The notes under the pieces were generated by a model. That model ran no database searches. It worked only from the letters and a program-made list of their open reading frames with translations, and had not been told where the DNA came from. From positions 1 through 64,000 of the IMG/VR virus record IMGVR_UViG_3300029258_003221: DNA of 64,000 bases; one strand, 5' to 3'. A program made the position numbers and the translations under genes. Positions 27,678 through 49,329 of this stretch are shown here, in pieces. Every line of letters starts with the position of its first letter. Position 1 is the stretch's first letter.

Positions 27678-28489
27678 AGCACGACAGAGTTATGATCCTT
27701 GGCTCCAATGGATACCTTGGAAAAAAGTTCCATGAAGCCTACCCAGAAGCCATCACCACAAACATCGATATCATGGACCAAAGAGAACTCCTCAGTGCCA
27801 TCGATGTCAATTCACCCAATGTTATCATAAATGCCGCAGGAAAAACCGGTAGACCAAATGTGGATTGGTGTGAGGATCACAAAAAAGAAACTCTTAGATC
27901 AAATGTTACAGCCCCTCTGATGATCTGTGATGAAGCCCTCAAACGAAATATCTACTTCGTCCACATTAGCTCAGGATGCATATATCAAAATGGGGAATTT
28001 GGAGAAGATGATGAGCCTAACTTCAAAGGGAGCTATTACTCTAAGACGAAGGCGTTTGCTGATCAACTTCTGGCTGACTTTCCTGCTTTGGTCCTTCGCC
28101 TGAGAATGCCATTCGATGATTCCCTCGGCGAACGAACTCTTATCGGCAAAATCTTAAAGTACAAGCGTGTAATCGATGTCAAGAACTCCCTGACCTACAC
28201 GCCAGACTTTGTTGAGACTGCTCAAAAGCTCATAGATCGCCGCAAAACAGGCATCTACAATGTCGTGAATACAGGGTCCATCTCCCCATTCGAAATCATG
28301 GAGATGTACAAAGAACACGTCGATCCCAATCATGAGTTCGAAAAACTCCCTCTCGAAGAACTGGGAGACTACTGCAATACAGGTAGAAGCAACTGCCGAC
28401 TGTCAACAAAAAAACTGGCAGAAGAAGGATTGGAACTGCCTCCAATCCACACTCGGCTCAAAGAAGCTATGCAAAAGATCGCATCATAG
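27674..28489 (+). CDS. NDP-4-keto-6-deoxy-sugar epimerase/reductase (RmlD-like, rhamnose synthesis)
   Basis: ILGSNGYLG, NAAGKTGRPNVDWCE, SSGCIY, YYSKTK. Confidence 0.9.
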   Translation: MKHDRVMILGSNGYLGKKFHEAYPEAITTNIDIMDQRELLSAIDVNSPNVIINAAGKTGRPNVDWCEDHKKETLRSNVTAPLMICDEALKRNIYFVHISSGCIYQNGEFGEDDEPNFKGSYYSKTKAFADQLLADFPALVLRLRMPFDDSLGERTLIGKILKYKRVIDVKNSLTYTPDFVETAQKLIDRRKTGIYNVVNTGSISPFEIMEMYKEHVDPNHEFEKLPLEELGDYCNTGRSNCRLSTKKLAEEGLELPPIHTRLKEAMQKIAS

Positions 28490-28765
28490 CTCGATCTCTT
28501 CGTCGTCCCAGATGATAGCTTTCTGATCAAACCGCTTGCCGAGTTCCGTGAGGTCTTCTAAAGAGATGTCGCTGATCTCAAACGCATCTTCCTCGTGCCC
28601 ATTGTAGCTGCCTCGAACCGGAACAGGATCGTATCCACGATCTCTCAGAAACTGAAGAAGCTCTCTATTGGCGTCTTCGTTCTCCTTGTCCGGGAGCTTG
28701 TTACCCATTGGGTTGTGTGCAGTGATAACACCACGCTTTCTGACGAACTCTCGAAATGTGCCCAT
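28484..28765 (-). CDS. DUF3293-like protein with a capsid-targeting-like N-terminus
   Basis: MGTFREFV; ITAHNP...EN..AN..L...G.Y..EE. Confidence 0.6.
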   Translation of the reverse strand: MGTFREFVRKRGVITAHNPMGNKLPDKENEDANRELLQFLRDRGYDPVPVRGSYNGHEEDAFEISDISLEDLTELGKRFDQKAIIWDDEEIEL

Positions 28766-28781
28766 GCTGTATATATGAGAC

Positions 28782-29837
28782 TTACTTGATATACCTGTAA
28801 TCCTCGCCAGCCTTCAAGCTTTTTACAGTATTATACATCAATTTAATTGTGCTCTTCACATCCTTCTTGTGAACCATTTCAACAGATGTATGCATGTACT
28901 TCAATGGCAAACTAATCAAACAGGAAGGAATTCCACCAGCAGCTTTGTAAAAAGCTCCTGTGTCCGTTCCACTGTTGCCATTGTATGTGCCGATCTGAAC
29001 TTTGACCTTACTCTTCTTGGCAACCTTCAAAACCTTCTTCAAAAGATTTCTCTGAACATCAGGACCATAATACAAAGCAGGCCCATTCCCGCATGACACA
29101 TCACCACACAATCGTGTATTATACATCGGTGAATGTGAATCATGTGTTACGTCTGTAATGATGGCCACATCCGGCTTGATACTGTGAGCAATCATGTGAG
29201 CGCCACACAAGCCTATCTCTTCCTGAACTGCATTTACTACATGCAAACCAAATGGAAGCTCGTCTTTCTTTTCCTTCAACATTCGAGCAACCTGAGCAAT
29301 CATATAACCGCCCATTCGATTGTCTAAAGCACGACACAAATAGTAATCACCCATGACCTCAAACGGAGCATCATAAGTCATCACACAACCAACATGAATT
29401 CCCATCTCCTCAACTTGCTTTTTGTTCTCAGCTCCAACATCAACATAAAGATTCTTAACCTTTGGTGTTTCTGAGTCACGCTCGTGAATAGCAAGCCAGC
29501 CAAATACGCCACGAACAGTTCCCTTTTGGCCAATTATGTTCACCCGTTGACCCGGAGCAACCATCTCATCTGATCCACCTCGGCGAACAACACTGATATA
29601 ACCCTTTTCATCAATGTGCGAGACTGTCCAACCAATTTCATCGGCATGAGCTTCAATCACCACTTTGTATTTGGCATCAGGGTTTACTACGGCAACTGCT
29701 GTCCCATAAGAATCACAGTATGTTTCATCAACATACTGTGAGATGTAGTCCAGCCAGATCTTCTGACCTTCGGTTTCCCAACCAGTGGGCGACTGAGCAT
29801 TCAAATAACTTTGTAGAAACTTCTCTCGCTTATTCAT
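28782..29837 (-). CDS. M42 family aminopeptidase
   Basis: EAHADEIG, ALDNRMG, VQEEIG, IITDVTH, LKYMHT. Confidence 0.93.
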   Translation of the reverse strand: MNKREKFLQSYLNAQSPTGWETEGQKIWLDYISQYVDETYCDSYGTAVAVVNPDAKYKVVIEAHADEIGWTVSHIDEKGYISVVRRGGSDEMVAPGQRVNIIGQKGTVRGVFGWLAIHERDSETPKVKNLYVDVGAENKKQVEEMGIHVGCVMTYDAPFEVMGDYYLCRALDNRMGGYMIAQVARMLKEKKDELPFGLHVVNAVQEEIGLCGAHMIAHSIKPDVAIITDVTHDSHSPMYNTRLCGDVSCGNGPALYYGPDVQRNLLKKVLKVAKKSKVKVQIGTYNGNSGTDTGAFYKAAGGIPSCLISLPLKYMHTSVEMVHKKDVKSTIKLMYNTVKSLKAGEDYRYIK

Positions 29838-30376
29838 CTTTCAAAATCCTTTTCGGTTAATGTCTTGTAATTCCGTCGCCATCTCCACGCATACTGCTCT
29901 TTCCAAATGTCAAATTTCTCTTCACCAAGATTTCTTTCAATCCATTTGCACAAATCATTTTTGCTGTAACCCAATGAATCGCCAAGTAAGATGTCTGTTG
30001 TAAGAACAGAAGCACCTGTGTTCATTCTAGTTGGGTCTTCTAAAAGTAAAAATGCGTACTCCGCTTGATGAATTCTCCAAATATTATCTGGAGAACAAAT
30101 ACCACCTTTATACATGTCGTCATGTCTGCTTTTAAGACACTCTATCGGATAATATTTAAAATCTTTTTGTCCAAAATATCGTTCAAATTGATTTGCCATT
30201 CGAGGGCTTGTAAGAGCCATTGGTTTTTTGCGGGTTATCAATAAAGCAAATTCCACATCATTGTGCGGGCCGATACTTCCATGTTCAGAAAGTAATTTAA
30301 TCTCAGTCCAATCAAAAGATAGAAACGAAGAAATCAACTCATCACAATCTGTTATCCAATCTTTTTTACTCATCAT
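29834..30376 (-). CDS. Hypothetical protein
   Basis: ORF track. Confidence 0.6.
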   Translation of the reverse strand: MMSKKDWITDCDELISSFLSFDWTEIKLLSEHGSIGPHNDVEFALLITRKKPMALTSPRMANQFERYFGQKDFKYYPIECLKSRHDDMYKGGICSPDNIWRIHQAEYAFLLLEDPTRMNTGASVLTTDILLGDSLGYSKNDLCKWIERNLGEEKFDIWKEQYAWRWRRNYKTLTEKDFER

Positions 30377-30600
30377 TAATGTATCATGACCACTCGATTA
30401 GTTTTCTCTTTTAATTCTTCTGAATCAAAAATACTGACAGACCAACAATCCACTTCGTCATCAGACAATACCGACAAGTCTACAAAATTAGCCAATTCTA
30501 TGTAAGCCAAGTTAACACAACCAACAGAAACATAAACATCTAATTCCGGGTCAAACTCTGACAACTTTTCAATTAAATCTTTAACCTTCATCGAAACCAT
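30376..30600 (-). CDS. Hypothetical protein
   Basis: MKVKDLIEKLSEFDPELDV, a common small phage motif. Confidence 0.6.
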   Translation of the reverse strand: MVSMKVKDLIEKLSEFDPELDVYVSVGCVNLAYIELANFVDLSVLSDDEVDCWSVSIFDSEELKEKTNRVVMIH

Positions 30601-30868
30601 ATTTCTCTAATAATTCACTACATTGTGATTCACCATAGCCTTCTTCAAAGCAACCATTTTCATTAAGCTTAAGCAATACTTCATCTGATTGTTCTTCTAA
30701 GACAATGATGTGCATTTTCAATCTATTTACATCATCTTCAGCAGAAGTCGGTTTAAATCATCATCTCTTTGATTAAATGAAAATCCTACAATAGGAATTG
30801 CTCCTATCATCTTCAACACACTTCTTCTATCTACTTTCATTTTTAAACTCCTCTTTTCATCGTAAATT

Positions 30869-31075
30869 TTAGTCCTCAAATTTCACTTCTAACAAGTCTT
30901 CTGGGAGACCGCCTGTTATCATCAAAAATTCTCCAGCATCTTTCTTCTCAAAAGATAACCCTAAAGCCTCCAAAACATCATCAGCTTCAATTCTGTGATT
31001 CTGGAATTTTAGCTTACCGTCCACATAAAGACCAGACCAATCGTCGCCGTACACTAATGTAATTTGATTAGTCAT
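30869..31075 (-). CDS. Hypothetical protein
   Basis: Start refined to ATG 31075 (MTNQITLVYG). Confidence 0.6.
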   Translation of the reverse strand: MTNQITLVYGDDWSGLYVDGKLKFQNHRIEADDVLEALGLSFEKKDAGEFLMITGGLPEDLLEVKFED

Positions 31076-31202
31076 TTTCAATTCTTTCCAATAGAAAAAA
31101 ACCATCGTTTTCCAATTGAATTGCGTAAGGCACATCTTCAAAAAGGTAAGCGTAGATTTCTGTTTTCACATCATTTACCAAAGCTTCTTTATGCTCACAA
31201 TA
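31068..31202 (-). pseudogene. 3' half of the 78-codon gene split by the IS607 element
   Basis: YCEHKEALVNDVKTEIYAYLFEDVPYAIQLENDGFFLLERIEND*; joins in frame to 35891-35790 across the GG core. Confidence 0.8.
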
Positions 31203-31336
31203 CCGTTCCTGAAAACCTACGGAAATCTAGGATACGCAAAAATGCCCTAAATTCCTTGTTCCATTCCTGCTTCATTGAGGCTGGTTTCACTCAAAACTAC
31301 AAGTTTCAAGCCAGAGCCTTCCTCTCCACAAGCGTT

Positions 31337-32443
31337 TCATATCTCCGTCGAACTGGCGGCGATGTATTCTAAATTACAACTGGCATTGAAGTCTCGGTCG
31401 TGGTGAGTTCCACATCCATCGCAATCCCATTCTCGGTCTGCCAAGGTCAAGTTTTGATTGATCTGACCGCAAATCGAACATGCTTTGCTGGATGGGAAGA
31501 AACGATCCACAGGGACGATCCTGCATCCATACCAAGTTCCTTTATATTCCAGTTGTCTTCTACACTCGAAAAATCCAATATCTGCGATTGATCGAGATAA
31601 TCTTCTGTTCTTCAACATTCCAGACACATTCAAGTCTTCAATTCCAATCGCACGCTTGGTTTTCGCTAATGCTGTTGTCATCTTGTGTAATGTATCTTTA
31701 CGAATGTTGCTGATCTTGAAGTAGAGCCGAGCAAGACGGTTCGCCGCTTTCTTTCGGTTCTGACTTCCTTTTTGTTTGCGACTCAAACTTCTGTTGAGCC
31801 GCTTGAGTTTCCTTAGTTTTTTCTTGAGCGGTTTCGGGTTCTCAAAGGTTGTCCCATCGCTCACGGTTGCCAGTGTTTTGATCCCCAAATCCATACCAAC
31901 CACATCATGTTCGTCCTTCTGGATATTGGGTTCTAACATATCTTCTTCAACTTGAATGCTGACAAACCACCTACCTGCTCTTTCACTTACAGTTGCCGAC
32001 AATATCTTGGCATCGGTTGGCAGGTATCCACTTTCTTTGAGTTTTAGTTTTCCAAGTCTCGGAAGTTGGATTGTTTTCTCTGTTACTTTGATCGTTCCCG
32101 TCAGTCGAAACCCGCCGATGCCTTTTCTCTTACTCTTGAATTTCGGGAACTTTCCTCGCTTCTTGAAGAAATTGTCAAAAGCACGATCTAGGTTTCTAAG
32201 GGCTTCCTGTGGGCTACATTTGCTGACTTCATACATCCAAGGGAATGTATCTTTCTTGAGGTCGTTGAGGCGACGGTGAAGTTCAATGGCGTTGGGAATC
32301 TTATCTTTGACTTCCATCGCTTGCTTCTTCTGGTTCATGCCCCAATTATATGTGAACCTAGCAGCACCAGCATGTTTTAGACATGCGGTTCGCTGCTTGT
32401 TGTTCAACCTCAATTCGGTCTTATAGCCCCTCTGTATCTTCAC
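31337..32443 (-). CDS. tnpB: TnpB RNA-guided nuclease
   Basis: RuvC I VGMDLGIK, RuvC II GIEDLNV, zinc finger CSICG...CDGCG, RuvC III DRDFNAS. Confidence 0.96.
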   Translation of the reverse strand: MKIQRGYKTELRLNNKQRTACLKHAGAARFTYNWGMNQKKQAMEVKDKIPNAIELHRRLNDLKKDTFPWMYEVSKCSPQEALRNLDRAFDNFFKKRGKFPKFKSKRKGIGGFRLTGTIKVTEKTIQLPRLGKLKLKESGYLPTDAKILSATVSERAGRWFVSIQVEEDMLEPNIQKDEHDVVGMDLGIKTLATVSDGTTFENPKPLKKKLRKLKRLNRSLSRKQKGSQNRKKAANRLARLYFKISNIRKDTLHKMTTALAKTKRAIGIEDLNVSGMLKNRRLSRSIADIGFFECRRQLEYKGTWYGCRIVPVDRFFPSSKACSICGQINQNLTLADREWDCDGCGTHHDRDFNASCNLEYIAASSTEI

Positions 32444-32861
32444 ACTCCTCCTCTGCTATGAACTTGCCGAAATCATGTTCATTGAACTCAGCAGTTTCAT
32501 AGACATCCCATCCAAGAACAACAGGGTCTTCGCCAACAGGCAAAGGCTGTCCATGTCCATCTAACAATGTGCCATCACGTTTTACATCAATGTGTTTAGC
32601 TCGCCAGCCATCGTACCAAAAGCCACCACGATTGAATGTGATGCAACCTTTGGGTTTGTATTCAACAACAATGTCAAATGTTGCTTCCTGCCCCATACTA
32701 ACAGGCTTGCGTTGCTTGAATTCTTTGATCTTGCAACTTTTGGGTTCTTTGCTCATCCACTCTGTTTCATTCAACTTATTCATTAGACCAAACATCAACT
32801 TTGTTGGGTCTTTCGTAACCAACTCGAACTTCAAGTAAGTTGGATTCACATTATCGGTCAT
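32421..32861 (-). CDS. Cargo hypothetical protein
   Basis: ORF track; overlaps both neighbours. Confidence 0.7.
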   Translation of the reverse strand: MTDNVNPTYLKFELVTKDPTKLMFGLMNKLNETEWMSKEPKSCKIKEFKQRKPVSMGQEATFDIVVEYKPKGCITFNRGGFWYDGWRAKHIDVKRDGTLLDGHGQPLPVGEDPVVLGWDVYETAEFNEHDFGKFIAEEECEDTEGL

Positions 32862-34849
32862 GCAACCTCCTTCAAATAATGTTCTCTCGCCGCCGCAGCT
32901 TCCTCTATGGTGTCATAAGTCCCGACACTTTGACGACCAACTCTTGCTGACCATCTCCCATTGGCTTGTTTGTAAACACCCTTATGTCCAGAGCCAGCCA
33001 ATTTTTGGCAATCGCATTTTGAGTTTGCCTTCATATTGCCGGGCAATCGTTGAAACTCTTTGCCATGCTCGCACCTGACTGTCACATACTCAAAAAATCC
33101 AGCATATTCTGACGCCAACTCCCACCCTTTATCCTCAAGAAACTGCAACAATTTTTGCTTTCCGTAATCCAAGCAGTTAGTTCTTACACAATCGCATTGG
33201 GCGTGTGGCCGCACGGCAGATCGACGCTTCATAGTGAAAACTTCACCATGTTCGCACCTAATTTGGATTTCACCCTCGCCACTATATTCAGATAGCAACT
33301 CCCACCCACGATTGGCAAAGATTTCAGTCAAGTTATCCTTACCCATCTCAGTCATTCTTTCGCCAGAGGCGATGTCGCAACAACGTGGACAACCACACTC
33401 GTTCTTGAAGTTCTGCACCAGCGTCGTCCAGACATGACCCTTATCGCACTGGATGGTCATATCTCCGTAGTATCCTTTATACTCCGAGAGACGCTTCCAG
33501 CCCCTCCGCTCCATCTCAGTGTCAATAATTTGAGTTTGGTGTTCTTTATCTTGCGGACGTTTAGATGAATAATCCCAAGAGTAGAATTTCTCTTTCTTGC
33601 AATCCATCGAAACAGACGAATCTTCGTAAAGCCAATCTCTAATTCGGAGTGCTGGCGTTCCACTGTAGCTGAACAATGACGCTGTGGAGTTCTTTAGTTC
33701 TCGATCATACTCCTCTTTGCTTCGGTCTATCACAGTATTCTTCGAGACATTGGCTTCTTCAACAATGACATCCACCACATCCTCAAGGAATTTAGGAACA
33801 GCCCCGCAAATGCTGAATGTTGGAGTTTTGTAAACCTTATGCCTGTATTTCGTAGTGCCAACGCTCACTGACCCGTCGCCATCGAAAAGTCCTCGGATGA
33901 AGTGTCTTCTCAACTCTTTAGGAATATCAGGAAAAGAAACAAGAAAGGTTTTGTTCGGAATAACGCCATGTTTCATCAAGGCTTCTACGAAACCAGTGTG
34001 ACAACATTCAAGAGTGTATTTGGTTTTCTTTCCGCCCTTATTTTTGCTGCTCACATGATATGGACCAAGAACCTTGCCTGTATATCCGATTGCATCCTTG
34101 AACTTCTCTAAATGTCTCTTCCCTTCTACAACCAACGAAATACGAAGCCGGTGTGGATTGAGTGCAACTGATCCGTCTGCATAGATGAACCCAAGCCAAT
34201 ATGCCTTTTCTTCTGTGTCTATCTCATCAAAGAAGTTGAAATCAAATGTGTATTTTCTAATCAAACCAGCAGAGCGGCGACTGCCAACTTTCAGTGTTAC
34301 TGCACGCCCGATGATGGCATTCCAAGTTCTATTGGGCAAGCCAGCTTGGATGAACTCTTGACTTTCCTTGGTGTAACTTGAGCGAAGAAAATCATCTTCC
34401 TCAGATGACCACGAAAAATCAGGCTTACTCAAGCCCAGTTTGACCGCCTTGTTCCTAATCTCGGATTCAGTCTTGTCTGAAAGCAATTCAAGCAATTCCG
34501 AATTGCTCATGGTGGCATAATTGGATTTCAACAAATCTAACTCTTTAGAAGTCCATTTCTTTCGCTTTCTGGTAAGCCCCAATCGGCAGGCTCTATCTTT
34601 GATTGCCTTGTATTTGCGGTTCGGAAGCAAATTCGACCATTGATCGGCTGCGATCTTGCCATAATACTGCCTGACAACATCATCTTCCGCCAACTGCCAT
34701 TTAGTATCTTGCGTCAAGCCAAGCCGAGATAATTTGTGTCTTATAGAAGTGTCACTCTTATCCAACTCGTTACTCAACCAATCAGTCGGTTTATCCGCAT
34801 TTTCTACAAGAAATGCCTCTTCTTTCTTAGTCCAATGCTTTCCGCTCAT
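32858..34849 (-). CDS. Multidomain LAGLIDADG endonuclease: 4 Myb-like repeats, double LAGLIDADG, 3 Zn-ribbon repeats, AP2-like domain
   Basis: WTxxE repeats; YWLGFIYADGSV and FIRGLFDGDGSV; GW.LLSEY...C..GH...C repeats; SGHKGVY...GRWSARV...GTYDTIEEAAAAR. Confidence 0.9.
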   Translation of the reverse strand: MSGKHWTKKEEAFLVENADKPTDWLSNELDKSDTSIRHKLSRLGLTQDTKWQLAEDDVVRQYYGKIAADQWSNLLPNRKYKAIKDRACRLGLTRKRKKWTSKELDLLKSNYATMSNSELLELLSDKTESEIRNKAVKLGLSKPDFSWSSEEDDFLRSSYTKESQEFIQAGLPNRTWNAIIGRAVTLKVGSRRSAGLIRKYTFDFNFFDEIDTEEKAYWLGFIYADGSVALNPHRLRISLVVEGKRHLEKFKDAIGYTGKVLGPYHVSSKNKGGKKTKYTLECCHTGFVEALMKHGVIPNKTFLVSFPDIPKELRRHFIRGLFDGDGSVSVGTTKYRHKVYKTPTFSICGAVPKFLEDVVDVIVEEANVSKNTVIDRSKEEYDRELKNSTASLFSYSGTPALRIRDWLYEDSSVSMDCKKEKFYSWDYSSKRPQDKEHQTQIIDTEMERRGWKRLSEYKGYYGDMTIQCDKGHVWTTLVQNFKNECGCPRCCDIASGERMTEMGKDNLTEIFANRGWELLSEYSGEGEIQIRCEHGEVFTMKRRSAVRPHAQCDCVRTNCLDYGKQKLLQFLEDKGWELASEYAGFFEYVTVRCEHGKEFQRLPGNMKANSKCDCQKLAGSGHKGVYKQANGRWSARVGRQSVGTYDTIEEAAAAREHYLKEVA

Positions 34850-35532
34850 ACCTCCACAACCTCTTTCTGTTCCGCAGGCACAAGACCATCTTGTGCTACC
34901 GCCGCCAACTTCTCTTCTTTCTTTTTCCTGCGATTTTCAGCACTACGCTTGCCGTAAATCTTATTGCTGAACGAGGACATCAATGTGAGCATATCTTCTA
35001 CAAGTTCTTGCTCGTAGGACTTGCCCAACACATTCTCCATCCACTCGATCTGAACACCATGACTGGCGAAGAAGTCGTCCAAGAATTGAAAGTTGAAGCG
35101 AGTCAAACGATCTTTGTGTTCGACCACAACCTTGCTGATCTTCTTGTCCTTGACCAACTCAAACAGGTTTCTCAACTTCGGTCTGGTGTCCGACATGCCT
35201 GATCCTACTTCTTCGTAGGATTTGACAATCTTGTACTGCTTCTTGACGCAGTAGGACAAGAGCCGCCCGTTCTGTCGTTCTAGGTCGCCCTTTTTCTTCT
35301 GTTCGTGGGAACTTACTCTTGCGTAAGTTGCGACCTTGACTTCACTTTCTTTCTTGTGTTCCACGATCTCGCCGCAGAAGGCTTTGATGTCTGATAATCT
35401 GTACCTTCTGTGATTTCCCGGCGTTTTGACTGGAACTAGCTTTCCTTCTTTATCCCATTCTCTGAGCGTATCGAGGCAGACACCGAGGATGTCGGCTGTT
35501 TTACCGATGCTCAACAACTTCTGTTCGTTCAT
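34846..35532 (-). CDS. tnpA: IS607 serine-recombinase transposase
   Basis: MerR-like HTH (TLREWDKEG...TPGNHRRY); YARVSS; VVEHKDRLTRF; ELVEDML; start refined to ATG 35532. Confidence 0.96.
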   Translation of the reverse strand: MNEQKLLSIGKTADILGVCLDTLREWDKEGKLVPVKTPGNHRRYRLSDIKAFCGEIVEHKKESEVKVATYARVSSHEQKKKGDLERQNGRLLSYCVKKQYKIVKSYEEVGSGMSDTRPKLRNLFELVKDKKISKVVVEHKDRLTRFNFQFLDDFFASHGVQIEWMENVLGKSYEQELVEDMLTLMSSFSNKIYGKRSAENRRKKKEEKLAAVAQDGLVPAEQKEVVEV

Positions 35533-35704
35533 TCTCAATGAGTCCTTTTTCAAGGAACGCATCGAGCCATTCATCGTATTGTTCCTGAAACTCCTCTACT
35601 GTCGGTGTTTCCTCCAAATCAAAGAGAATCGGATGGATCGTACCATCCTCCATCTCAAACTCGGTTTTGGTTACTCTAACGATTTTTCGACTCAACATGT
35701 TCAT
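35501..35704 (-). CDS. Small acidic protein, first ORF inside the IS607 element
   Basis: AGGAGAG RBS; overlaps the tnpA start. Confidence 0.65.
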   Translation of the reverse strand: MNMLSRKIVRVTKTEFEMEDGTIHPILFDLEETPTVEEFQEQYDEWLDAFLEKGLIENERTEVVEHR

Positions 35705-35789
35705 TCTCTCTCCTATAATAGTCGTCTCAACTTCATTTTTTCTTTAGCAATCCGTAGATTTTCCGAGATTTTTCTTCAACTGCTTAGAA

Positions 35790-35891
35790 CCCTCCACTCA
35801 AAGTTTGATATTCGATGAACTGACTTCTTAAAGCTTCACTTGAGAGGCCAACCATTTCGATCTTTGGTCCTATTACTTTGTAACTTTCCAT
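35790..35891 (-). pseudogene. 5' half of the gene split by the IS607 element
   Basis: AGGAAAGG RBS; MESYKVIGPKIEMVGLSSEALRSQFIEYQTLSGG, then runs into the element. Confidence 0.8.
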
Positions 35892-36028
35892 TCAATCGCC
35901 TTTCCTTTGTAAATTTCGAATGAATTTTTCAACGCTGAAGGATATGGACGCTTAGGGTCTTGTAAAATTCTTAAACGTATCATTAAAATCAAAAATCCAT
36001 TTTTTAGCTCATCTTTGTTGATGTCCAT
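35873..36028 (-). CDS. Hypothetical protein (51 aa, not in the track)
   Basis: MDINKDELKNG...; AAAGGA RBS. Confidence 0.45.
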   Translation of the reverse strand: MDINKDELKNGFLILMIRLRILQDPKRPYPSALKNSFEIYKGKAIEWKVTK

Positions 36029-36051
36029 TTATCCTTTTAACCTCTTTAAAT

Positions 36052-36240
36052 TTATGAGCCTCTTGAGTTACGGGCGATCAAGTTATCGACCAAAAATTCA
36101 GCGATCTGACCGTTGTCCAACATCACTTTGTAATGTTCTTTGTCATCTATCCAACGGTCTAATACAATTGCATCATGTCGTTCTCTTGGTTCACTATGAG
36201 AGAATGCCACAACATGAGATTTGTCAGCAAATTTGAACAT
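36052..36240 (-). CDS. Hypothetical protein
   Basis: ORF track. Confidence 0.55.
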   Translation of the reverse strand: MFKFADKSHVVAFSHSEPRERHDAIVLDRWIDDKEHYKVMLDNGQIAEFLVDNLIARNSRGS

Positions 36241-36722
36241 TATTCAGCCATTTCTTGAATTTTAAAATTCAACACGTTTTTTCTTTTATACTCCTGAACG
36301 TCCTCGAATGTCATTCCTATGAATTTACCTAAAGGTATGTCGGTCTCCGTCTCAGGATCATCATACTGTAAAATCGATAACTCTAAGTCATCATAGGAAT
36401 ACGTTTCATTAGCTTCGTGATTGAGATTCTTGAATTCGTAAATCATGTTACGCTTCCATTCATCTCTGTTTGTGTTCCCATTCGTGTATGTTAAGATTAA
36501 ATCTGGAGCAGAATAAACATCGATTCTTGCCTTGTCATAGTGGCTTTCAGGCTCTTCATCAAAGAACTTAAGCAACACACGTTTGTTTGGATTGTCAACT
36601 TCCAATTTAGTGACAATCAACTGATTGTTTAGAATGTGTCTAACTGGATTACCCATTTTTCTCGGCCTCTTCAACGGCCATATGATACAAGCCTTCAAAC
36701 CAATTTGTGATCCCGTCGCCAT
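36240..36722 (-). CDS. Hypothetical protein
   Basis: ORF track; true start may be later. Confidence 0.55.
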   Translation of the reverse strand: MATGSQIGLKACIIWPLKRPRKMGNPVRHILNNQLIVTKLEVDNPNKRVLLKFFDEEPESHYDKARIDVYSAPDLILTYTNGNTNRDEWKRNMIYEFKNLNHEANETYSYDDLELSILQYDDPETETDIPLGKFIGMTFEDVQEYKRKNVLNFKIQEMAE

Positions 36723-37035
36723 TCACGACTTCACACAGATAAGTTTCCAGCTTTCCCGCTCGTCTCATCTTGTCTATCACATCATCACACCAAACATCGT
36801 GGTCATCATTTGCCTTTTCAAAAAGGTCAAGGTTGTCAGATGTATGATCCTCCGAGTATTGACATAGTTCTAGTAAGTCCAGCGTGTCTTCATGAACACT
36901 GAATTCTCTTAGGTCTTCACGCTCTTTGGTGGGATAAAGGATTACGTCAGCTTCTCCATCTTTGACCACAAATTCCCAGTATACTGTTACCTTAGACATC
37001 TTTGTTTTCCTTGTTTTGTTCTTTTTTGCTGTCAT
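36649..37035 (-). CDS. Hypothetical protein
   Basis: ORF track. Confidence 0.55.
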   Translation of the reverse strand: MTAKKNKTRKTKMSKVTVYWEFVVKDGEADVILYPTKEREDLREFSVHEDTLDLLELCQYSEDHTSDNLDLFEKANDDHDVWCDDVIDKMRRAGKLETYLCEVVNGDGITNWFEGLYHMAVEEAEKNG

Positions 37036-37174
37036 CTAACAAGATCAACAAATCTCTGATTGACACAACTGCTGAAGCGTTCATCTTCTTAGCCAATTCG
37101 GGGTGATTCATGTCATCAGGGATATTTTCTAGTTTGTCTTTGATATCCACTCCTTGAACTCCTTTTCGTCGCAA
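36992..37174 (-). CDS. Hypothetical protein
   Basis: ORF track; true start probably the internal GTG. Confidence 0.45.
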   Translation of the reverse strand: MRRKGVQGVDIKDKLENIPDDMNHPELAKKMNASAVVSIRDLLILLDDSKKEQNKENKDV

Positions 37175-37219
37175 ACATCGGCCTTAGACAAGTTCTCAGG
37201 GCCGGGCATTGGACGCAGG

Positions 37220-37513
37220 TTAAAAAAGATAAGAGATGTACTTGAAAAGCACAATGATGGCAGAGGGAAGACCTACGAAAAGACAAATGTTTTTTGTCAA
37301 TTCTATGAGGCTTATTTTTTTCAATCCCTTTTCTTGAATTTGAAACTCATAGACCCCATGATCTCGGCGTAATGAATGAAACCATCCTTCTCCTGTACCA
37401 CTCCATTGTTCATGTTGTTGCCGGGTGATTCCTAGTTCTTCTAACGTTGTAATCAACCGATTATTGCCTTGATTTTTTCTCATCTTCCACAAAGCTCTAT
37501 GTAAATCAAACAC
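37220..37513 (-). CDS. Hypothetical protein with a C-terminal TM
   Basis: ORF track. Confidence 0.45.
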   Translation of the reverse strand: MFDLHRALWKMRKNQGNNRLITTLEELGITRQQHEQWSGTGEGWFHSLRRDHGVYEFQIQEKGLKKISLIELTKNICLFVGLPSAIIVLFKYISYLF

Positions 37514-38623
37514 TTATTTCACCTTTGCCGCCTTTCTACGGCACTCTTTGCACCGGGTAGCATAGCCATCGCTCTTAGAACTGTCTACCCCAAACTCTTC
37601 GAACAACTTCACGTCCTTGCATCCATTGCACAACTTCTTACCCTCGGCAGCATAGGGATTTACCTTCTTCCTCTTAGACCTCTTTCCAGCAATGGAGCCT
37701 CCCTCACGCTCACAGATGTAACGACCATTTCGGGCAATGTTCTTCTCGTGGGTCTTCCTGAGAACCGTGTGAGTCTCATTACAAAAATTGCATTCGACTT
37801 CGACAGTGTCTTTGGCAATCTTCTCGTCGTAATGCTTCTTGGCTTTCTTACGATTTAGCTCTTTTCTGTGCTCCACATAATCTACTCCATGGAGTTTACT
37901 CATTTCCTCATCAGCCCATTTGGTTGCTTCTCTGTCATTTTCAAAGCCAAGTTCGGCCTCAGACCATATCTCAAAATCGTAACCATTTCGATCAGCATAA
38001 GTCATGTTATCCATGATTTGAATTTGAACTTTGTGTGACTGAAGCATTCGTTTGGGTTTTACTTCTACCAACTTTGACTCATTGATCAAGAAGTCAGCAC
38101 TTCGATCACGTCCGTCAATTTTGAATCCAATTTGAACTTCGTATGTTTTCACACTGTCGTCTGCTTCTAGCAACAATATGGCCTTGAGTTCATAGGATGA
38201 TTGGAACGGGAAGGTTTTTCCCATTTTCTTTGATTGGTAAACACCTCTTCTGCGGGTGGGCTCAAAGTCATTGTTCCTATGACGTTTTGTTGTCAATCCT
38301 GCAAGGTATTTCTTCAAACGCTTGCCTTCAGGCGTGGCCCACTTTTTGTTAGCTGAATCACGCATTTTCTGTTTTGTTGCTTTGGACCTTTTGTAGCTGG
38401 TCGCTTCGGCAATGCGTTGGCGTCCCTCTTCAGTGTACACACGAGTGGGGATAGCATTTGCTGTGGCACACTTCTGGCAGATGTATTTGCCGTTCTTTTG
38501 GATGTTCTCTTTGGCCTTGAATTTACCGGGATGCTTTGTTGTGCCACATTGTTCGCAATCTATGGAAATGTGATCTTTGGCTCGAACCCCTGCATAGATT
38601 TGCTCAAACTCTTTTACATTCAT
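37514..38623 (-). CDS. TnsA-like PD-(D/E)XK endonuclease with Zn-ribbon and basic helical segments
   Basis: PFQSSYELKAILLLEADDSV...ADFLI...LVEVKP; several CxxC; AGGAG RBS at ATG 38623. Confidence 0.8.
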   Translation of the reverse strand: MNVKEFEQIYAGVRAKDHISIDCEQCGTTKHPGKFKAKENIQKNGKYICQKCATANAIPTRVYTEEGRQRIAEATSYKRSKATKQKMRDSANKKWATPEGKRLKKYLAGLTTKRHRNNDFEPTRRRGVYQSKKMGKTFPFQSSYELKAILLLEADDSVKTYEVQIGFKIDGRDRSADFLINESKLVEVKPKRMLQSHKVQIQIMDNMTYADRNGYDFEIWSEAELGFENDREATKWADEEMSKLHGVDYVEHRKELNRKKAKKHYDEKIAKDTVEVECNFCNETHTVLRKTHEKNIARNGRYICEREGGSIAGKRSKRKKVNPYAAEGKKLCNGCKDVKLFEEFGVDSSKSDGYATRCKECRRKAAKVK

Positions 38624-38650
38624 AGCTTTCTCCTTAATCTCTAACATCGG

Positions 38651-38765: not shown

Positions 38766-40205
38766 TTAGATGATGAAATTCGCCACGCTCATGCGGGCAT
38801 AGAACTTCGATCCTTCCCTTAACAACTTTTTTCCATACCGAGTCAAGATTCCCTTACGAGGGCAGAAGCTCTCAGGATCAAGCACTACGGGTGTTTGTGT
38901 CAGTGGCACGTAGGGACAGTAGAAATATCCCGAGTCCATGTAAGAATCACCTTTGTATCCCATGAGGATTTGACCTTGTGGGAACAGAGGGTCTTTGTAG
39001 AGACGCCATCTGTTGTTGATCGTACCAACATACTGAATACCAAGACTTGAAGTGAAGGTTTCAGAAGGTGCAGGTGCGAAACCAGCAGTAGCAGTTTCGA
39101 AGATAGAAGCAACTTCAGGGCTTGTGACAAGCCAGTTACATCCGCCTCTGAGCGTCTTACGGTGAACGACGTTAGAGACTTCGACAACCTTGATGTACAG
39201 GGCTTCGTACTTCTCTTTGATAGTGTCACCGAGTGCTGTATTGAAGTCCCAAACAGCGACAGTACCGGCGTTGTTACGCAGGTCAGTCAGAACCTCACGG
39301 TCGATCTCAAGATTGATTTCCTGAGCGAGGACAGCAGTCAATTCTGCCTCTGCATCAAGGTTGTGCTGAGATCGGAGGTCTTGCTGAGCTTCATAAGACC
39401 AGACAGCTTTGAGCTTACGGGTCTTAGCAGCAATTTCTTCAGATTCGACAACCAGATTAACTTCTGGGAGGTCTTGGTTGCATTCCATGTTGTATTCGTA
39501 AGAAACAACAGCGTGGTTTTCACCGGGATCACCGTCCCAAGTGAAGGTCATTTCGCCCGTGGTCAGGTCAATCGATCCGCTTGTAACAGCAGGAGAAGGA
39601 GCAGATCCAACGTTGGAGAAAGTGAAGGTTCCAGCTTCAGACACAACAAATGTCTGGATAGCGGTTGATCCATCATAGATGGTACCAGTGAGAGTACCAG
39701 CAAGGATAGGAGTGTGCTCAAGAGCACCGAAGGTGGAGGTTGTATCGCCACCGGCATCCGTTGTGGTAGTTTCATTCTGCACGAACTGATGCGTGTAGTA
39801 GATTTCCAAGTTTCCATCACCGGAAGCCAACTGCTGGAGTGATGTGCTGTCATCCGATGGGAATCCAGCGTTCAGATCAGCACCTCTCATGGCACCTTTG
39901 TTGCTGGAGTAGCGGAATCGCAGGTAGTACACCAAACCAGTTGGGCCGAGCAATGGTTGCACGGAAACAACTTTGTTTGCGATCAGTTGTGGGTAAATTC
40001 TTCGCACAAGCGGAATAGAAATTCGCTTGAACTGAGCGATGTCACCTGTGTCGGTCATGGTCTCATTGATGAGACGCTGGTTTTCCAGAAGCACAGCGGC
40101 TGTGGAACGTTCAAACCGATCAGAAATGCCATCCAGCATCTGAGTTCGACCCCATTTGGCTTCGATCTTAGCTGCTTCGTTTAGATATTGAGCATTTGCA
40201 TTCAT
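38766..40205 (-). CDS. gp23: Major capsid protein, T4 gp23-like
   Basis: IPLVRRIYP...VQPLLGPTGL...RKLKAVWSYEAQQDL...EINLEIDRE...GYFYCPYVPL...KGILTRYG. Confidence 0.97.
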   Translation of the reverse strand: MNANAQYLNEAAKIEAKWGRTQMLDGISDRFERSTAAVLLENQRLINETMTDTGDIAQFKRISIPLVRRIYPQLIANKVVSVQPLLGPTGLVYYLRFRYSSNKGAMRGADLNAGFPSDDSTSLQQLASGDGNLEIYYTHQFVQNETTTTDAGGDTTSTFGALEHTPILAGTLTGTIYDGSTAIQTFVVSEAGTFTFSNVGSAPSPAVTSGSIDLTTGEMTFTWDGDPGENHAVVSYEYNMECNQDLPEVNLVVESEEIAAKTRKLKAVWSYEAQQDLRSQHNLDAEAELTAVLAQEINLEIDREVLTDLRNNAGTVAVWDFNTALGDTIKEKYEALYIKVVEVSNVVHRKTLRGGCNWLVTSPEVASIFETATAGFAPAPSETFTSSLGIQYVGTINNRWRLYKDPLFPQGQILMGYKGDSYMDSGYFYCPYVPLTQTPVVLDPESFCPRKGILTRYGKKLLREGSKFYARMSVANFII

Positions 40206-46803: not shown

Positions 46804-49329
46804 TTACATTTCTGAAAAATCTATCTCTTCTTCATCCTGCTCTTTAGCGTAATCCTTGATATCCAGATTGTATTTCTGAATATCTTCTTCTGTTGGATCA
46901 GGTAAAGGCGTGGCTCCTGTTGGTCCTTCCATTCCGCCTGATGGGCCTTGATCATCTCCTGTTGGAGCAGGTGCTCCACCCATTCCCATATCATCTTCAC
47001 CGCCTTCTTCACCTTCTGGCGGTTGATCTCCCAACATAGGACTTGGTCCACCAGCTTCTCCACCAATTTCGGTTTCGTCTGGTCCGGGAAGTCCAACGCC
47101 CAAAAGCATTGGGTTTTGAGCAATGATTTGGAGTTTGAGTTCTTCCATCTTTTGGATTTTAAGACGAGCAAGCATCTTCAGAGCTTCTTCTTCATCGTAT
47201 TTCATCCACTTGGTAAGAATATCAAAGTCCGACATGAGTTGTGCTCCTTTCAAAGCACCGGCGTTTTGAATTCTACCAGCTACAACTTCTGATCTTGTTA
47301 GCTCACGCCAATCAGAAGGTGGAGTTAACTTAATTTCCAAATCCTCATAGGCTTCTTTTGGGAAACCAAGCAGCGTTAAGTGACGGTTGCAAATTTCCCA
47401 AAAAGCGTTCTGAATGTGAGATTGAAGTCGTTCGATCATGCGAGCGAACTTCACATCCTGTGCAGACAGGGTGATTCTTGTACTTTGAACATCTTCGTTA
47501 TTGAAATAGTTCTTAGGGAAATTCAGAGCTGTAAACAGTTTATTTCTGAAGTAGACTGTATCATCGATTTCACCAAGATTCTGAGCACCCGGTAAAGTTT
47601 CAACTCTTGTGTTGGAGTTGGGCCTAACAGGAATCCAGTAATCTTCATCGGCTGCTGGTGCGTGCCAACGTTCTTCAACACTGGAGGCACCCGGCAATCC
47701 AGATTTTCCGGTAGCAACCTTTTTCTTTTTGAACTGATCTTTCATTCGTTCAACAAAGGCTTCCGCCCTGTAAGGCGGAAGCTGGAACGTGTCAATATAG
47801 AACACTCTACGTTCTGGTGCTCTTGTCAATCGATAAACCACCATGGCATCTTCCATCAATCTCAATTGATGAGCAGGTCCACGTGCTGCTTCAATAAGAC
47901 TTACACCATATGGATAGAATGTTTGTCTATCATCCCCGACACGAATATGCACAACCTGATCTGCTGCGAATCTAATAGCTGTAGCTTGTTGTAAATCTGC
48001 TTCTGTTGCCTGTGTGACTTCCACACGGGAAAGGCTTTGGTAGTCAGGCCCTTCTTTAGACTGTTGGAATTCAACCAATTTTCCTTTGGTTGTTTCAATT
48101 CGATACATGCTGTCAGGAGGCAATGGAACAAGACCTACGATACCATGTTTAGGGTTTTCCAAATCAATAATGACTTCATAAAAGAAGTCGCCCATGATGA
48201 ATAATCTTTTGGCCATGTCCCAACATGTATTTTGGTCCATATTAAGCATGTCACGATGAAACAATAGATATTCACATTCTTCTTTGACTGATTCATTGCC
48301 GCAAACAACCTGCATTACTCTGCCATCTTCATTTTTCTGGCAATTGTGAACAACTCCCCAGTTTGTACAGAAGTTATGATGTTTCTCAACAGTTAGGTCA
48401 TAGACATCAATCTCTTCCCAAGGTTGTATTCCGACAACTCTTCTTCGATCTTCTTTGCGACCGAGCCATTTCATCTCTTTGTTTGAGAATCCAGCTTTTT
48501 CGATTCGGCTTTTAATTGTCTTGAAGTCATGACCTGTCATGTCAACAATCTGCTGAGTCGTCAATCCTTCAGAGATGTATCGACAAAGTTTGTTAACGCT
48601 TTCAAGTTCAGGATTGTCTTTGCCCGTAGCCCATTCGTCGGCAAACTGTCGTTCGTGAATCCAGCCTTTGCGATGAGTATAAATTCTAGGGAACTGATTG
48701 ACTTTGATTTCGGTAATATCCGGGTTTGGCGAAATGCGATAGAAAGGCATGAGTTCATCACCGGAATTTAGTTCACCTGCTTCTCTCCATGTACCTTTTC
48801 TGGTCATAATTCGGTGATCAGGTGTGCAGATCACATAATTGCCATCATCAAAAATGATTTTGATTGTTTTGGCTTTTTTGGTTTTACGTGCATCAAATGC
48901 CCAGCCAAGCGTATAATCGCCTTTATCCTGATCATAGCAATAGACTAAGAATCGCTCGTTTTCATTGACGAGATCTTCGATCTTTTTATATCCATGTGGT
49001 GTGGCGATAAGAGTATCGCCAGCCAAACAGGTCTCATCTGCGAAAACGGTCATTGCCATTTCGATTTCCGGCATATTTCGCAGTCGTTCGTATTCTTTGT
49101 AGCGATGAACTCTATTAGTGACGGTACTTAAATCTACGAAATCATTAGTGTCTCGAAGGCGAATGGCCCCTCGTCCACCACCTGTAGTTCCGTCATTGCC
49201 ACCCCTGATGTCAGGAATAGCTCCATCAACTGGATATCCCGCTCCACTGGCATCTCGGTCTCTGCGTCTTGCGAGTGGATCATCAGTGAAAGCGTAAGTG
49301 AAAGTTTTGAAATAATCCCACCAAGCCAT
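46804..49329 (-). CDS. gp20: Portal protein, T4 gp20-like, with an intein
   Basis: RLMEDAMVVYRLTRAPERRVFYID, EDYWIP, VETLPGAQNLGEIDD, FARMIERLQ. Confidence 0.96.
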   Translation of the reverse strand: MAWWDYFKTFTYAFTDDPLARRRDRDASGAGYPVDGAIPDIRGGNDGTTGGGRGAIRLRDTNDFVDLSTVTNRVHRYKEYERLRNMPEIEMAMTVFADETCLAGDTLIATPHGYKKIEDLVNENERFLVYCYDQDKGDYTLGWAFDARKTKKAKTIKIIFDDGNYVICTPDHRIMTRKGTWREAGELNSGDELMPFYRISPNPDITEIKVNQFPRIYTHRKGWIHERQFADEWATGKDNPELESVNKLCRYISEGLTTQQIVDMTGHDFKTIKSRIEKAGFSNKEMKWLGRKEDRRRVVGIQPWEEIDVYDLTVEKHHNFCTNWGVVHNCQKNEDGRVMQVVCGNESVKEECEYLLFHRDMLNMDQNTCWDMAKRLFIMGDFFYEVIIDLENPKHGIVGLVPLPPDSMYRIETTKGKLVEFQQSKEGPDYQSLSRVEVTQATEADLQQATAIRFAADQVVHIRVGDDRQTFYPYGVSLIEAARGPAHQLRLMEDAMVVYRLTRAPERRVFYIDTFQLPPYRAEAFVERMKDQFKKKKVATGKSGLPGASSVEERWHAPAADEDYWIPVRPNSNTRVETLPGAQNLGEIDDTVYFRNKLFTALNFPKNYFNNEDVQSTRITLSAQDVKFARMIERLQSHIQNAFWEICNRHLTLLGFPKEAYEDLEIKLTPPSDWRELTRSEVVAGRIQNAGALKGAQLMSDFDILTKWMKYDEEEALKMLARLKIQKMEELKLQIIAQNPMLLGVGLPGPDETEIGGEAGGPSPMLGDQPPEGEEGGEDDMGMGGAPAPTGDDQGPSGGMEGPTGATPLPDPTEEDIQKYNLDIKDYAKEQDEEEIDFSEM
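48343..49029 (-). mobile_element. Intein (229 aa) in the portal
   Basis: N-terminal CLAGDTLIAT, block B CTPDHRIMT, C-terminal VYDLTVEKHHNF...VVHN followed by +1 Cys. Confidence 0.95.

What the first reader, a model, noticed from the sequence alone, without database searches (positions are those of the whole stretch)
32858..34849. Four-module DNA-binding endonuclease: Myb-like x4, LAGLIDADG x2, Zn ribbon x3, AP2-like
Seen: repeats W(T/S)xxE...L..R...I..(R/K)...LGL; intact acidic motifs YADG and FDGDG; three GW.(L)LSEY...C..G(H/E/K) units; a C-terminal AP2-like SGHKGVY...GTYDTIEEAAAAR. AP2 is known on HNH endonucleases. This stack on a LAGLIDADG inside an IS607 is unusual (inference).
Basis: partly seen in the sequence, partly recalled or inferred. 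Interest (0 to 1): 0.6.

Follow-up and report, generated by a model that had tools for sequence, protein, structure and literature searches.

The report
Multi-domain homing endonuclease nested in phage IS607
The gene encodes a real and rare LAGLIDADG homing endonuclease carrying eight extra DNA-binding modules, and it sits in a slot of an IS607 transposon in a T4-like phage that related transposon copies fill with other, unrelated nuclease genes, so it looks like one selfish element living inside another.

Summary
ORF 32858-34849 (-) encodes 663 aa with four Myb/SANT-like three-helix repeats, a two-motif LAGLIDADG core, three Cys/His zinc units and a C-terminal AP2 domain. Both catalytic Asp residues (D225, D325) are invariant in 12 relatives. 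One refinement: the "Zn ribbons" belong to the CapR/DUF4379/DUF723 zinc-finger superfamily, already described as repeated DNA-binding modules of phage homing endonucleases.

The gene lies inside a sharply bounded IS607-family element (31203-35792) of a T4-like phage. The gene order is orf67-tnpA-HE-orf146-tnpB-omega RNA, with overlapping stop/start codons.

Comparison changes the picture. A 93% identical IS607 copy lacks the endonuclease. Other copies hold a different nuclease gene in the same slot: a five-zinc-finger homing-endonuclease-like protein, an EndoVII/HNH-like protein, or a LAGLIDADG_2 protein. One copy carries further insertions in tnpA and tnpB.

The best reading is a free-standing homing endonuclease gene that has invaded a transposon, using the transposon's conserved sequence as its homing site.

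Myb+LAGLIDADG proteins are very common. The full stack through AP2 is rare and unannotated. I rate it a new variant of a known kind, of moderate interest.

The parts
31203..35792 (-). Whole IS607-family element (about 4.59 kb). The left end begins with GGGTTC at 35792 and the right end finishes with ...GGAACGG at 31203.
   Evidence: Similarity to four independently inserted copies (L002, L010/L012, L011, L093) starts and stops at these points, and the flanks are unrelated. GG is present at both boundaries, as IS607 TnpA requires (PMC10690162).
35501..35704 (-). orf67, a small conserved gene inside the left end. Its function is unknown.
   Evidence: Present upstream of tnpA in every related copy, at 66-97% aa identity. 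No PHROG hit; Pfam and NCBIfam were not scanned for it.
34846..35529 (-). tnpA, an IS607-type serine recombinase (MerR-like HTH + resolvase catalytic domain). The likely start is the Met at 35529; the longer ORF reaches 35574.
   Evidence: Pfam Resolvase 2.8e-23, HTH_17 1.2e-9, MerR 4.6e-9. The alignment to the L002 TnpA begins at residue 17 of the long ORF.
32858..34849 (-). The 663-aa multi-domain LAGLIDADG homing endonuclease (P0001). Its start overlaps the tnpA stop (ATGA) and its stop overlaps the orf146 start (ATGA).
34286..34840 (-). Four Myb/SANT-like three-helix repeats (aa 4-43, 49-92, 97-139, 145-188).
   Evidence: Repeat alignment. The repeat profile hits MYB3 3.7e-8, c-Myb 1.3e-7 and GcrA 1.3e-4. 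Pfam Myb_DNA-bind_6 1.7e-4. AlphaFold2 shows helices 8-16/22-29/33-42 and the equivalent sets in the other repeats.
33575..34255 (-). Monomeric double-motif LAGLIDADG nuclease core (aa 199-425). The motifs are ...GFIYADGS (D225) and ...GLFDGDGS (D325).
   Evidence: phrog_4645 4.4e-50, PDB 2dch 2.7e-6, Foldseek hits to LAGLIDADG enzymes. D225 and D325 are invariant in 12 homologues.
33002..33547 (-). Three CapR/DUF4379/DUF723-type zinc-finger units (aa 435-492, 500-556, 560-616). Ligands are C468/H472/C487/C490, C532/H534/C552/C554 and C593/H595/C612/C614.
   Evidence: Repeat alignment and ligand positions. Weak Pfam DUF723, DUF4379 and CapR hits. Relatives that match aa 446-619 at 1e-28 to 1e-33 score CapR 4e-24 and DUF4379 5e-24. 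phrog_559 1.2e-19.
32861..32992 (-). C-terminal AP2 domain (aa 620-663).
   Evidence: Pfam AP2 1.5e-5. PDB profile hit to TEM1 AP2 0.0067. Structural matches 2gcc Z 6.4, 7et4 rmsd 1.0 A, 7wq5 47% identity. phrog_99 1e-7.
32421..32861 (-). orf146, a conserved gene of unknown function that always lies between the nuclease slot and tnpB.
   Evidence: Every relative whose context could be read (six of seven) lies directly upstream of an IS607-type tnpB, at 58-84% identity; the seventh, P0042, could not be read. No Pfam, PHROG, NCBIfam or Atlas lead.
31337..32443 (-). tnpB, the RNA-guided nuclease gene of the element.
   Evidence: Pfam OrfB_IS605 7.4e-33, Cas12f1-like_TNB 2.3e-20, HTH_OrfB_IS605 8.5e-11.
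31203..31336 (-). Right end and presumed omega RNA scaffold downstream of tnpB.
   Evidence: Conserved to the last base in all copies. A sub-threshold RAGATH-18 match lies at 31264-31332 (25.7 bits, E 0.23).

Best explanation
P0001 is an intact, probably active, monomeric LAGLIDADG homing endonuclease of the free-standing phage type. Its nuclease core is flanked by eight small DNA-binding modules: four Myb-like repeats on the N-terminal side, and three CapR/DUF4379-type zinc fingers plus one AP2 domain on the C-terminal side. These modules most likely lengthen and strengthen the DNA footprint around the roughly 20-bp site that the LAGLIDADG saddle reads. This is the same logic as the modular tails of I-TevI-like and T5orf172 endonucleases.

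The gene is a selfish passenger. It has colonised the slot between tnpA and orf146 of an IS607-family transposon carried by T4-like or large phages, and it is translated as part of the tnpA-to-tnpB operon.

Inferred mechanism: two phages that both carry this transposon family co-infect one cell. The enzyme cuts copies that lack it, at or near the tnpA/orf146 junction. Recombinational repair of the break then copies the endonuclease gene into the cut copy. The conserved transposon sequence serves as the homing site, and the transposon in turn carries the endonuclease to new genomes.

Shown here: the domain identities, the conserved catalytic and zinc ligands, the element boundaries, and the variable occupancy of the slot. 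Inferred: nuclease activity, the location of the target, and homing itself.
For: Domains.

Catalytic and zinc residues: D225 and D325 are invariant in 12 family members, as are the unit-1 ligands (C468, H472, C487, C490) and C532/H534 of unit 2; C552 and C554 are nearly invariant. The unit-3 ligands (C593, H595, C612, C614) are invariant in the 7-sequence tail alignment.

Element boundaries: defined by four independent insertion contexts.

Copies without the endonuclease: L010 is 92-93% identical in nucleotides across tnpA and tnpB but has a 109-aa ORF in place of HE+orf146. L011 has only about 120 bp there.

The same slot, with similarity resuming about 12 bp before the orf146 ATG, holds different nucleases:
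- an orthologous LAGLIDADG in L002 (51% identity);
- a five-zinc-finger protein matching phrog_559 (4e-80) and phrog_9084 'homing endonuclease' in L093-95;
- an EndoVII/HNH-like protein in L097 (phrog_1035 4e-9);
- an HTH-LAGLIDADG_2-MerR-HTH protein in L100/101.

In L100 a second LAGLIDADG_2 gene splits tnpA, and tnpB is interrupted as well. This damages the transposon and argues for parasitism.

Most other homologues are free-standing between ordinary phage genes, in L003-L009.

Tail modules are shuffled. P0013 carries the zinc-finger + AP2 tail (54% identity) on a LAGLIDADG_2 core. P0020 carries MerR-type HTH repeats on the same LAGLIDADG_3-type core as P0001.

Barth et al. describe CapR/DUF723 zinc-finger repeats as modular DNA-binding regions of phage homing endonucleases, and place nuclease genes at the boundaries of genetic exchange between phages.
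Against: No cleavage or homing has been observed, and the target site is unknown.

No allele with orf146 but an empty slot was found, so the exact vacant site is not in hand.

The endonuclease is far more diverged between the window and L002 (51% aa) than TnpA (81%) or TnpB (76%). That fits fast evolution or replacement, but it is also what relaxed selection would give.

The constant presence of orf146 beside every nuclease could mean a functional partnership rather than a mere landing site.

The overlapping start/stop codons with tnpA and orf146 look more integrated than a recent invasion would. This tight coupling is also seen in L002.
Confidence: 0.6

Rival explanations
1. General phage-versus-phage weapon. 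The enzyme cuts competitor phage genomes at sites unrelated to IS607 (marker exclusion, as with the T4 seg and mob genes), and the transposon is only its vehicle.
For: Most homologues are free-standing in phage genomes next to unrelated genes, so the family as a whole does not depend on IS607. The tail modules are exchanged between different cores, which suits rapid retargeting.
Against: At least four different nuclease types sit at exactly the same slot in diverged IS607 copies. This points to something in the transposon itself attracting them. The window and L002 phages share no synteny outside the element.
Confidence: 0.15
2. Helper of the transposon. The protein-guided endonuclease works with or backs up TnpB, cutting empty phage sites so that the whole IS607 is copied in.
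For: It is co-transcribed and translationally coupled with tnpA and tnpB. The arrangement is conserved in two phages that share no synteny outside the element. TnpB is known to act as a homing nuclease for its own element (abstracts listed: PMC10055086, PMC10690162).
Against: The window, L002, L010, L011 and L093 all have unrelated flanks. One fixed protein specificity cannot match unrelated empty sites. Nearly identical elements spread without it (L010, L012). In L100 nuclease genes break tnpA and tnpB.
Confidence: 0.12
3. Domesticated DNA-binding protein. The nuclease is silent, and the protein acts as a regulator or architectural factor of the transposon or the phage, as CapR does in the PLE satellite.
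For: Eight DNA-binding modules is more than cleavage needs. Domesticated relatives of homing endonucleases exist (CapR). LAGLIDADG maturases such as bI3 are among the fold matches.
Against: Both catalytic Asp residues and the surrounding motifs are invariant across the family. The slot is filled by unrelated nucleases in sister elements, which is not what a fixed regulatory role predicts.
Confidence: 0.08
4. A decaying remnant with no present function.
For: Homing endonuclease genes commonly degenerate after fixation. The Myb region is only 35-40% identical to L002.
Against: The 663-codon frame is uninterrupted, all modules are modelled with confidence (pLDDT 81.8), and all ligands are kept.
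Confidence: 0.05

Closest known systems
Free-standing and intron-encoded phage LAGLIDADG endonucleases of phrog_4645 (for example I-MsaII of Staphylococcus phage MSA6 and its Kayvirus relatives)
   Same: A two-motif LAGLIDADG_3 core preceded by a helix-turn-helix or Myb-like module; 27-34% identity over aa 147-422.
   Different: Those proteins are about 260-310 aa with one N-terminal module. This one has four Myb repeats plus a 240-aa zinc-finger/AP2 tail, and it lies inside a transposon rather than in or beside a phage core gene.
T5orf172 (GIY-YIG superfamily) homing endonucleases of ICP1 and other phages, with repeated CapR/DUF723/DUF4397 (spelling as in the paper; its figure legend also writes DUF723/4379) zinc-finger regions (Barth et al. 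2023, NAR Genom Bioinform lqad076; Netter et al. 2021)
   Same: The same superfamily of repeated zinc-finger DNA-binding modules, present in variable number, and the same idea of a modular, exchangeable targeting region.
   Different: The catalytic domain here is LAGLIDADG, not T5orf172. The zinc fingers are C-terminal and are combined with AP2 and Myb modules.
HNH homing endonucleases with AP2 domains (phrog_99 and phrog_13470 types)
   Same: A single AP2 DNA-binding domain appended to a mobile nuclease.
   Different: A different nuclease fold. Pfam's AP2 gathering score is not reached here (25.6 versus 33.3 bits), so membership rests on fold and profile evidence.
IStrons (a group I intron fused to IS607/IS605 tnpA-tnpB; Tourasse 2014, Zedaveinyte 2023)
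   Same: A second selfish element combined with an IS607-type transposon, and the GG-dependent serine TnpA.
   Different: No intron RNA was detected in or around the element. The partner is a protein-only endonuclease gene placed between tnpA and tnpB, not a ribozyme at the left end.
Engineered megaTAL nucleases (a TAL-repeat array fused to a LAGLIDADG meganuclease). This comparison is from my own knowledge and was not tested here.
   Same: A LAGLIDADG core given extra affinity or addressing by an appended array of small DNA-binding repeats.
   Different: This protein is natural, uses three unrelated module types on both sides of the core, and has an unknown target.

Membership tests
LAGLIDADG homing endonuclease (monomeric, two-motif) | Two LAGLIDADG motifs, each ending in a catalytic acidic residue | tested here: met
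   YADG (D225) and FDGDG (D325) are both invariant in 12 homologues and align to the two motifs of I-Tsp061I.
LAGLIDADG homing endonuclease (monomeric, two-motif) | Tandem alpha-beta-beta-alpha-beta-beta-alpha fold | tested here: met
   AlphaFold2 secondary structure for aa 213-423. Foldseek probability 1.00 to I-Tsp061I, bI3, I-AniI and I-OnuI, with 116 matches at E<=0.001 for the whole model.
LAGLIDADG homing endonuclease (monomeric, two-motif) | Site-specific double-strand cleavage and homing | not testable with these tools
   Needs biochemistry and co-infection or plasmid homing assays.
LAGLIDADG homing endonuclease (monomeric, two-motif) | Sporadic presence or absence at one genomic position in related genomes | tested here: met
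   Present in the window and L002. Absent from the 93% identical L010/L012 and from L011. Replaced by other nucleases in L093, L097 and L100.
IS607-family insertion sequence | Serine-recombinase TnpA with an N-terminal MerR-like HTH, plus TnpB | tested here: met
   Pfam hits. The YARVSS motif with the catalytic Ser is read directly from the translation.
IS607-family insertion sequence | Discrete ends found in different genomic contexts, with a GG core dinucleotide at the junctions | tested here: met
   The same ends occur in five unrelated flanks (window, L002, L010/L012, L011, L093). In the four whose junction sequences were printed (window, L002, L010/L012, L011), GG is present at both the left and right junctions.
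IS607-family insertion sequence | Omega RNA encoded at the 3' end of tnpB | tested here: inconclusive
   A 134-nt right end is conserved in all copies, but the only RNA-family match is a sub-threshold RAGATH-18 hit.
AP2 DNA-binding domain | Three-stranded sheet packed on a C-terminal helix, with the AP2 sequence profile | tested here: met
   Z 6.4, 6.3 and 5.7 to 2gcc, 7wq5 and 7et4, at 27-47% identity. Pfam AP2 at 1.5e-5, below the gathering score.
CapR/DUF4379/DUF723 zinc-finger superfamily | Profile match and four Cys/His ligands in a unit of about 60 aa | tested here: inconclusive
   Direct Pfam hits are weak (E 0.01-0.1). The link is transitive, through P0084, P0106 and P0151, which score above threshold. 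No solved-structure match was found for the units. Zinc binding was not tested.
Myb/SANT-like HTH | Three-helix repeat with conserved Trp and the Myb profile | tested here: met
   The repeat profile hits Myb proteins at 3.7e-8 to 1.6e-5. AlphaFold2 shows three-helix bundles. Single-sequence Pfam scores fall just under threshold (22.2 versus 22.9 bits).
IStron | Group I intron at the left end of the element | tested here: not met
   No intron family matched in 29000-38000 at E<=1. The left end has only about 90 bp before orf67.

The most novel reading that the evidence does not exclude
The IS607 lineage defined by orf67 and orf146 is a dedicated nuclease hub. orf146 may be a functional partner of whichever protein-guided nuclease sits upstream, for example an immunity, targeting or repair-biasing factor. 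The element would then run two gene drives at once: RNA-guided TnpB for the transposon's insertion site, and a swappable protein-guided endonuclease for spread between phages. That would be a cooperative two-nuclease mobile element, not simple nesting.
Probability: 0.15. Interest if true: 0.8.

Novelty: new variant of a known kind. Interest (0 to 1): 0.55.

Why it matters
It shows a natural LAGLIDADG enzyme addressed by arrays of three unrelated small DNA-binding modules. This is the design principle that engineers reached with megaTALs. It also shows that such tails are swapped between different nuclease cores.

It further shows that transposons carried by phages can themselves be homing sites. 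In one IS607 lineage the tnpA-tnpB interval is occupied by at least four different nuclease genes, and in one copy tnpA and tnpB are broken by further insertions. That is a clear, testable case of selfish elements parasitising each other inside viral genomes. It also places a protein-guided and an RNA-guided homing nuclease in one operon, where their interplay can be studied.

Tried and rejected
- **IStron or intron reading.** Rfam found no group I or II intron in 29000-38000 or in L100.
- **Shared synteny as the cause of the window/L002 similarity.** tblastx and blastn show similarity confined to the element.
- **Close cultured relatives.** Megablast of 24 kb against 50,697 phage records found nothing.
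- **A solved fold for the zinc units.** Foldseek and VIA-align on the C-terminal model gave only the AP2 matches. The PDB profile search gave only marginal ribosomal bL31 hits. I therefore do not call the units 'ribbon' or 'treble clef' on structural grounds.
- **Function of orf146.** No Pfam, PHROG or NCBIfam family, and the Atlas leads all scored under 0.9 or TM 0.5.
- **orf146 in IMG/VR.** No relative other than the record itself.
- **P0042.** This orf146 relative, fused to an ADP-ribosylglycohydrolase hit, could not be read because no DNA was available.
- **L021.** A TnpB lies near a LAGLIDADG gene, but the arrangement is different, so it was not counted.
- **L097 protein.** It has no Pfam HNH hit. 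Its class rests on PHROG hits and on the H-x-D-H...N...N motif read by eye.
- **P0043 nuclease domain.** It looks PD-(D/E)xK-like to me, but this was not confirmed.
Full report
**Where it is.** The window is the first 64 kb of a 234,631-bp viral record, estimated to be 44% complete. It is a T4-like phage. It encodes a Gp23 major capsid protein (38766-40205, 9e-86), a T4-type portal that contains an intein (46804-49329), and a T4-type large terminase. No close relative exists among 50,697 deposited phage genomes.

ORF 32858-34849 (-) encodes 663 residues.

- *Myb repeats.* The four N-terminal repeats align to each other. A profile built from 25 such repeats taken from family members hits MYB3, c-Myb, B-Myb and GcrA at 3.7e-8 to 1.3e-4.
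- *Nuclease core.* Residues 199-425 match phrog_4645 'endonuclease' at 4e-50 and I-Tsp061I by sequence profile. In the AlphaFold2 model (mean pLDDT 81.8) they match the monomeric LAGLIDADG enzymes by Foldseek. The two catalytic Asp residues, D225 and D325, are invariant in 12 homologues.
- *Zinc units.* The three units each carry four Cys/His ligands. Their direct Pfam hits to DUF723, DUF4379 and CapR are weak. However, proteins that match this region at 1e-28 to 1e-33 score CapR and DUF4379 far above threshold. I therefore place the units in that superfamily. The literature describes it as the repeated, modular DNA-binding region of phage T5orf172 homing endonucleases. No solved structure matched the units.
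- *AP2.* The last 44 residues form an AP2 domain by profile and by structure.

**How common is the architecture.** An exhaustive search gave 24,747 proteins at E<=0.001 but only 75 at E<=1e-30.

- Myb repeats joined to a LAGLIDADG_3 core are abundant, including proteins with five or more repeats.
- The span from Myb to AP2 is found only in a handful of metagenomic proteins. These are P0002, P0003, P0004, P0005, P0009 and some fragments; those that carry a name are called hypothetical.
- Module numbers vary within this small family: one, three or four Myb repeats, two or three zinc units, and AP2 present or absent.
- The tail is exchanged between cores. P0013 carries a 54% identical zinc-finger + AP2 tail on a LAGLIDADG_2 core. 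P0020 carries four MerR-like HTH repeats on the same LAGLIDADG_3-type core as P0001.

**The transposon.** On the - strand the genes run orf67, tnpA (MerR HTH + resolvase), the endonuclease, orf146, tnpB. The endonuclease's start overlaps the tnpA stop, and its stop overlaps the orf146 start.

Comparison with L002, L010/L012, L011 and L093 shows similarity that begins at GGGTTC (35792) and ends at ...GGAACGG (31203), with unrelated flanks each time. GG lies at both junctions, as the IS607 serine TnpA requires. The 134 nt after tnpB are conserved and give a sub-threshold RAGATH-18 match, consistent with an omega RNA. The partial genome holds a single copy of the element, plus one distant tnpB at 196245-196925.

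**The slot.** This is the main new result.

- L010 is 92-93% identical to the window across tnpA and tnpB, yet it has a 109-aa ORF in place of the endonuclease and orf146. L011 has about 120 bp there.
- L002 comes from a phage sharing no synteny outside the element. It has the orthologous endonuclease (51% identity), orf141 (65%) and an extra 421-aa LAGLIDADG gene. Its TnpA and TnpB are 81% and 76% identical to the window's.
- Every orf146 relative whose context could be read (six of seven) lies directly upstream of an IS607-type tnpB.
- Similarity between copies resumes about 12 bp before the orf146 ATG. Upstream of that point each lineage has a different gene:
  - a five-zinc-finger protein matching phrog_559 and phrog_9084 'homing endonuclease' in L093-95;
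  - an EndoVII/HNH-like protein in L097;
  - an HTH-LAGLIDADG_2-MerR-HTH protein in L100/101;
  - an unidentified sequence in L096, whose TnpB is 95% identical to the window's.
- In L100 a second LAGLIDADG_2 gene splits tnpA between the HTH and the catalytic domain, and tnpB is also interrupted.
- Most other homologues of P0001 are free-standing between ordinary phage genes.

**Interpretation.** These facts fit a homing endonuclease gene that uses the transposon as its target and its vehicle. A sequence conserved across otherwise unrelated phages is a good homing site, and different nuclease families have found it independently.

I infer that the target lies at or near the tnpA/orf146 junction. 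I hold this part with less confidence, about 0.4. Free-standing phage endonucleases often cut at some distance from their own gene, and no orf146-containing empty slot was recovered.

The helper model, in which the enzyme drives the whole IS607 into empty sites, is weakened by three points. The insertion sites are unrelated. Endonuclease-free copies spread. In L100 nuclease genes damage the transposon.

Domestication is weakened by the invariant active site. A wider role in phage competition cannot be excluded.

**Limits.** No activity, target or expression data exist. The zinc-unit assignment is transitive. The nuclease classes of the L093 and L097 proteins rest on PHROG names and on motifs read by eye. 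The survey of IS607 copies was opportunistic, not a census.

Noticed in passing
window 46804-49329 (-): The T4-type portal protein (Gp20) carries an intein splicing domain at aa 113-329, another selfish element in a structural gene of this phage.
   Followed up: no
window 37514-38647 (-): A 377-aa ORF next to the capsid gene carries repeated Cys-rich units, and its C-terminus matches phrog_1035 and phrog_2633 'endonuclease VII' (2.6e-7). It may be a further free-standing homing-endonuclease-like gene beside gp23. It has no Pfam hit.
   Followed up: partly
L100 1280-6400 (also L101): A related IS607 copy is riddled with insertions. A LAGLIDADG_2 gene splits tnpA, another LAGLIDADG_2 gene fills the slot, and tnpB is interrupted by an ORF with an HNH-like motif. 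No intron RNA was detected.
   Followed up: partly
L002 10335-11600: A second LAGLIDADG gene (421 aa) lies between orf141 and tnpB. It has an N-terminal EndoVII-type zinc module and an AP2-like C-terminal motif read by eye; no AP2 profile hit was obtained.
   Followed up: partly
window 32421-32861 (-) and 35501-35704 (-): orf146 and orf67 are conserved passengers of this IS607 lineage (58-84% and 66-97% identity), with no detectable family or fold.
   Followed up: partly
genome C1 196245-196925 (outside the window): A second, distant TnpB-like sequence (27.5% identity over 240 aa) lies elsewhere in the same viral record.
   Followed up: no
window 28782-29837 (-) and 54110-55282 (+): The phage encodes an M42 glutamyl aminopeptidase (5.6e-71) and an M28 peptidase (1.6e-41), which are unusual cargo for a T4-like phage.
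   Followed up: no
window 9817-12085 (+): A polysaccharide pyruvyl transferase gene and a group 1 glycosyltransferase gene lie side by side, suggesting phage-encoded glycan modification.
   Followed up: no
window about 28000-38000: GC skew turns strongly negative (-0.17 to -0.32), matching the switch to - strand genes that includes the element.
   Followed up: no
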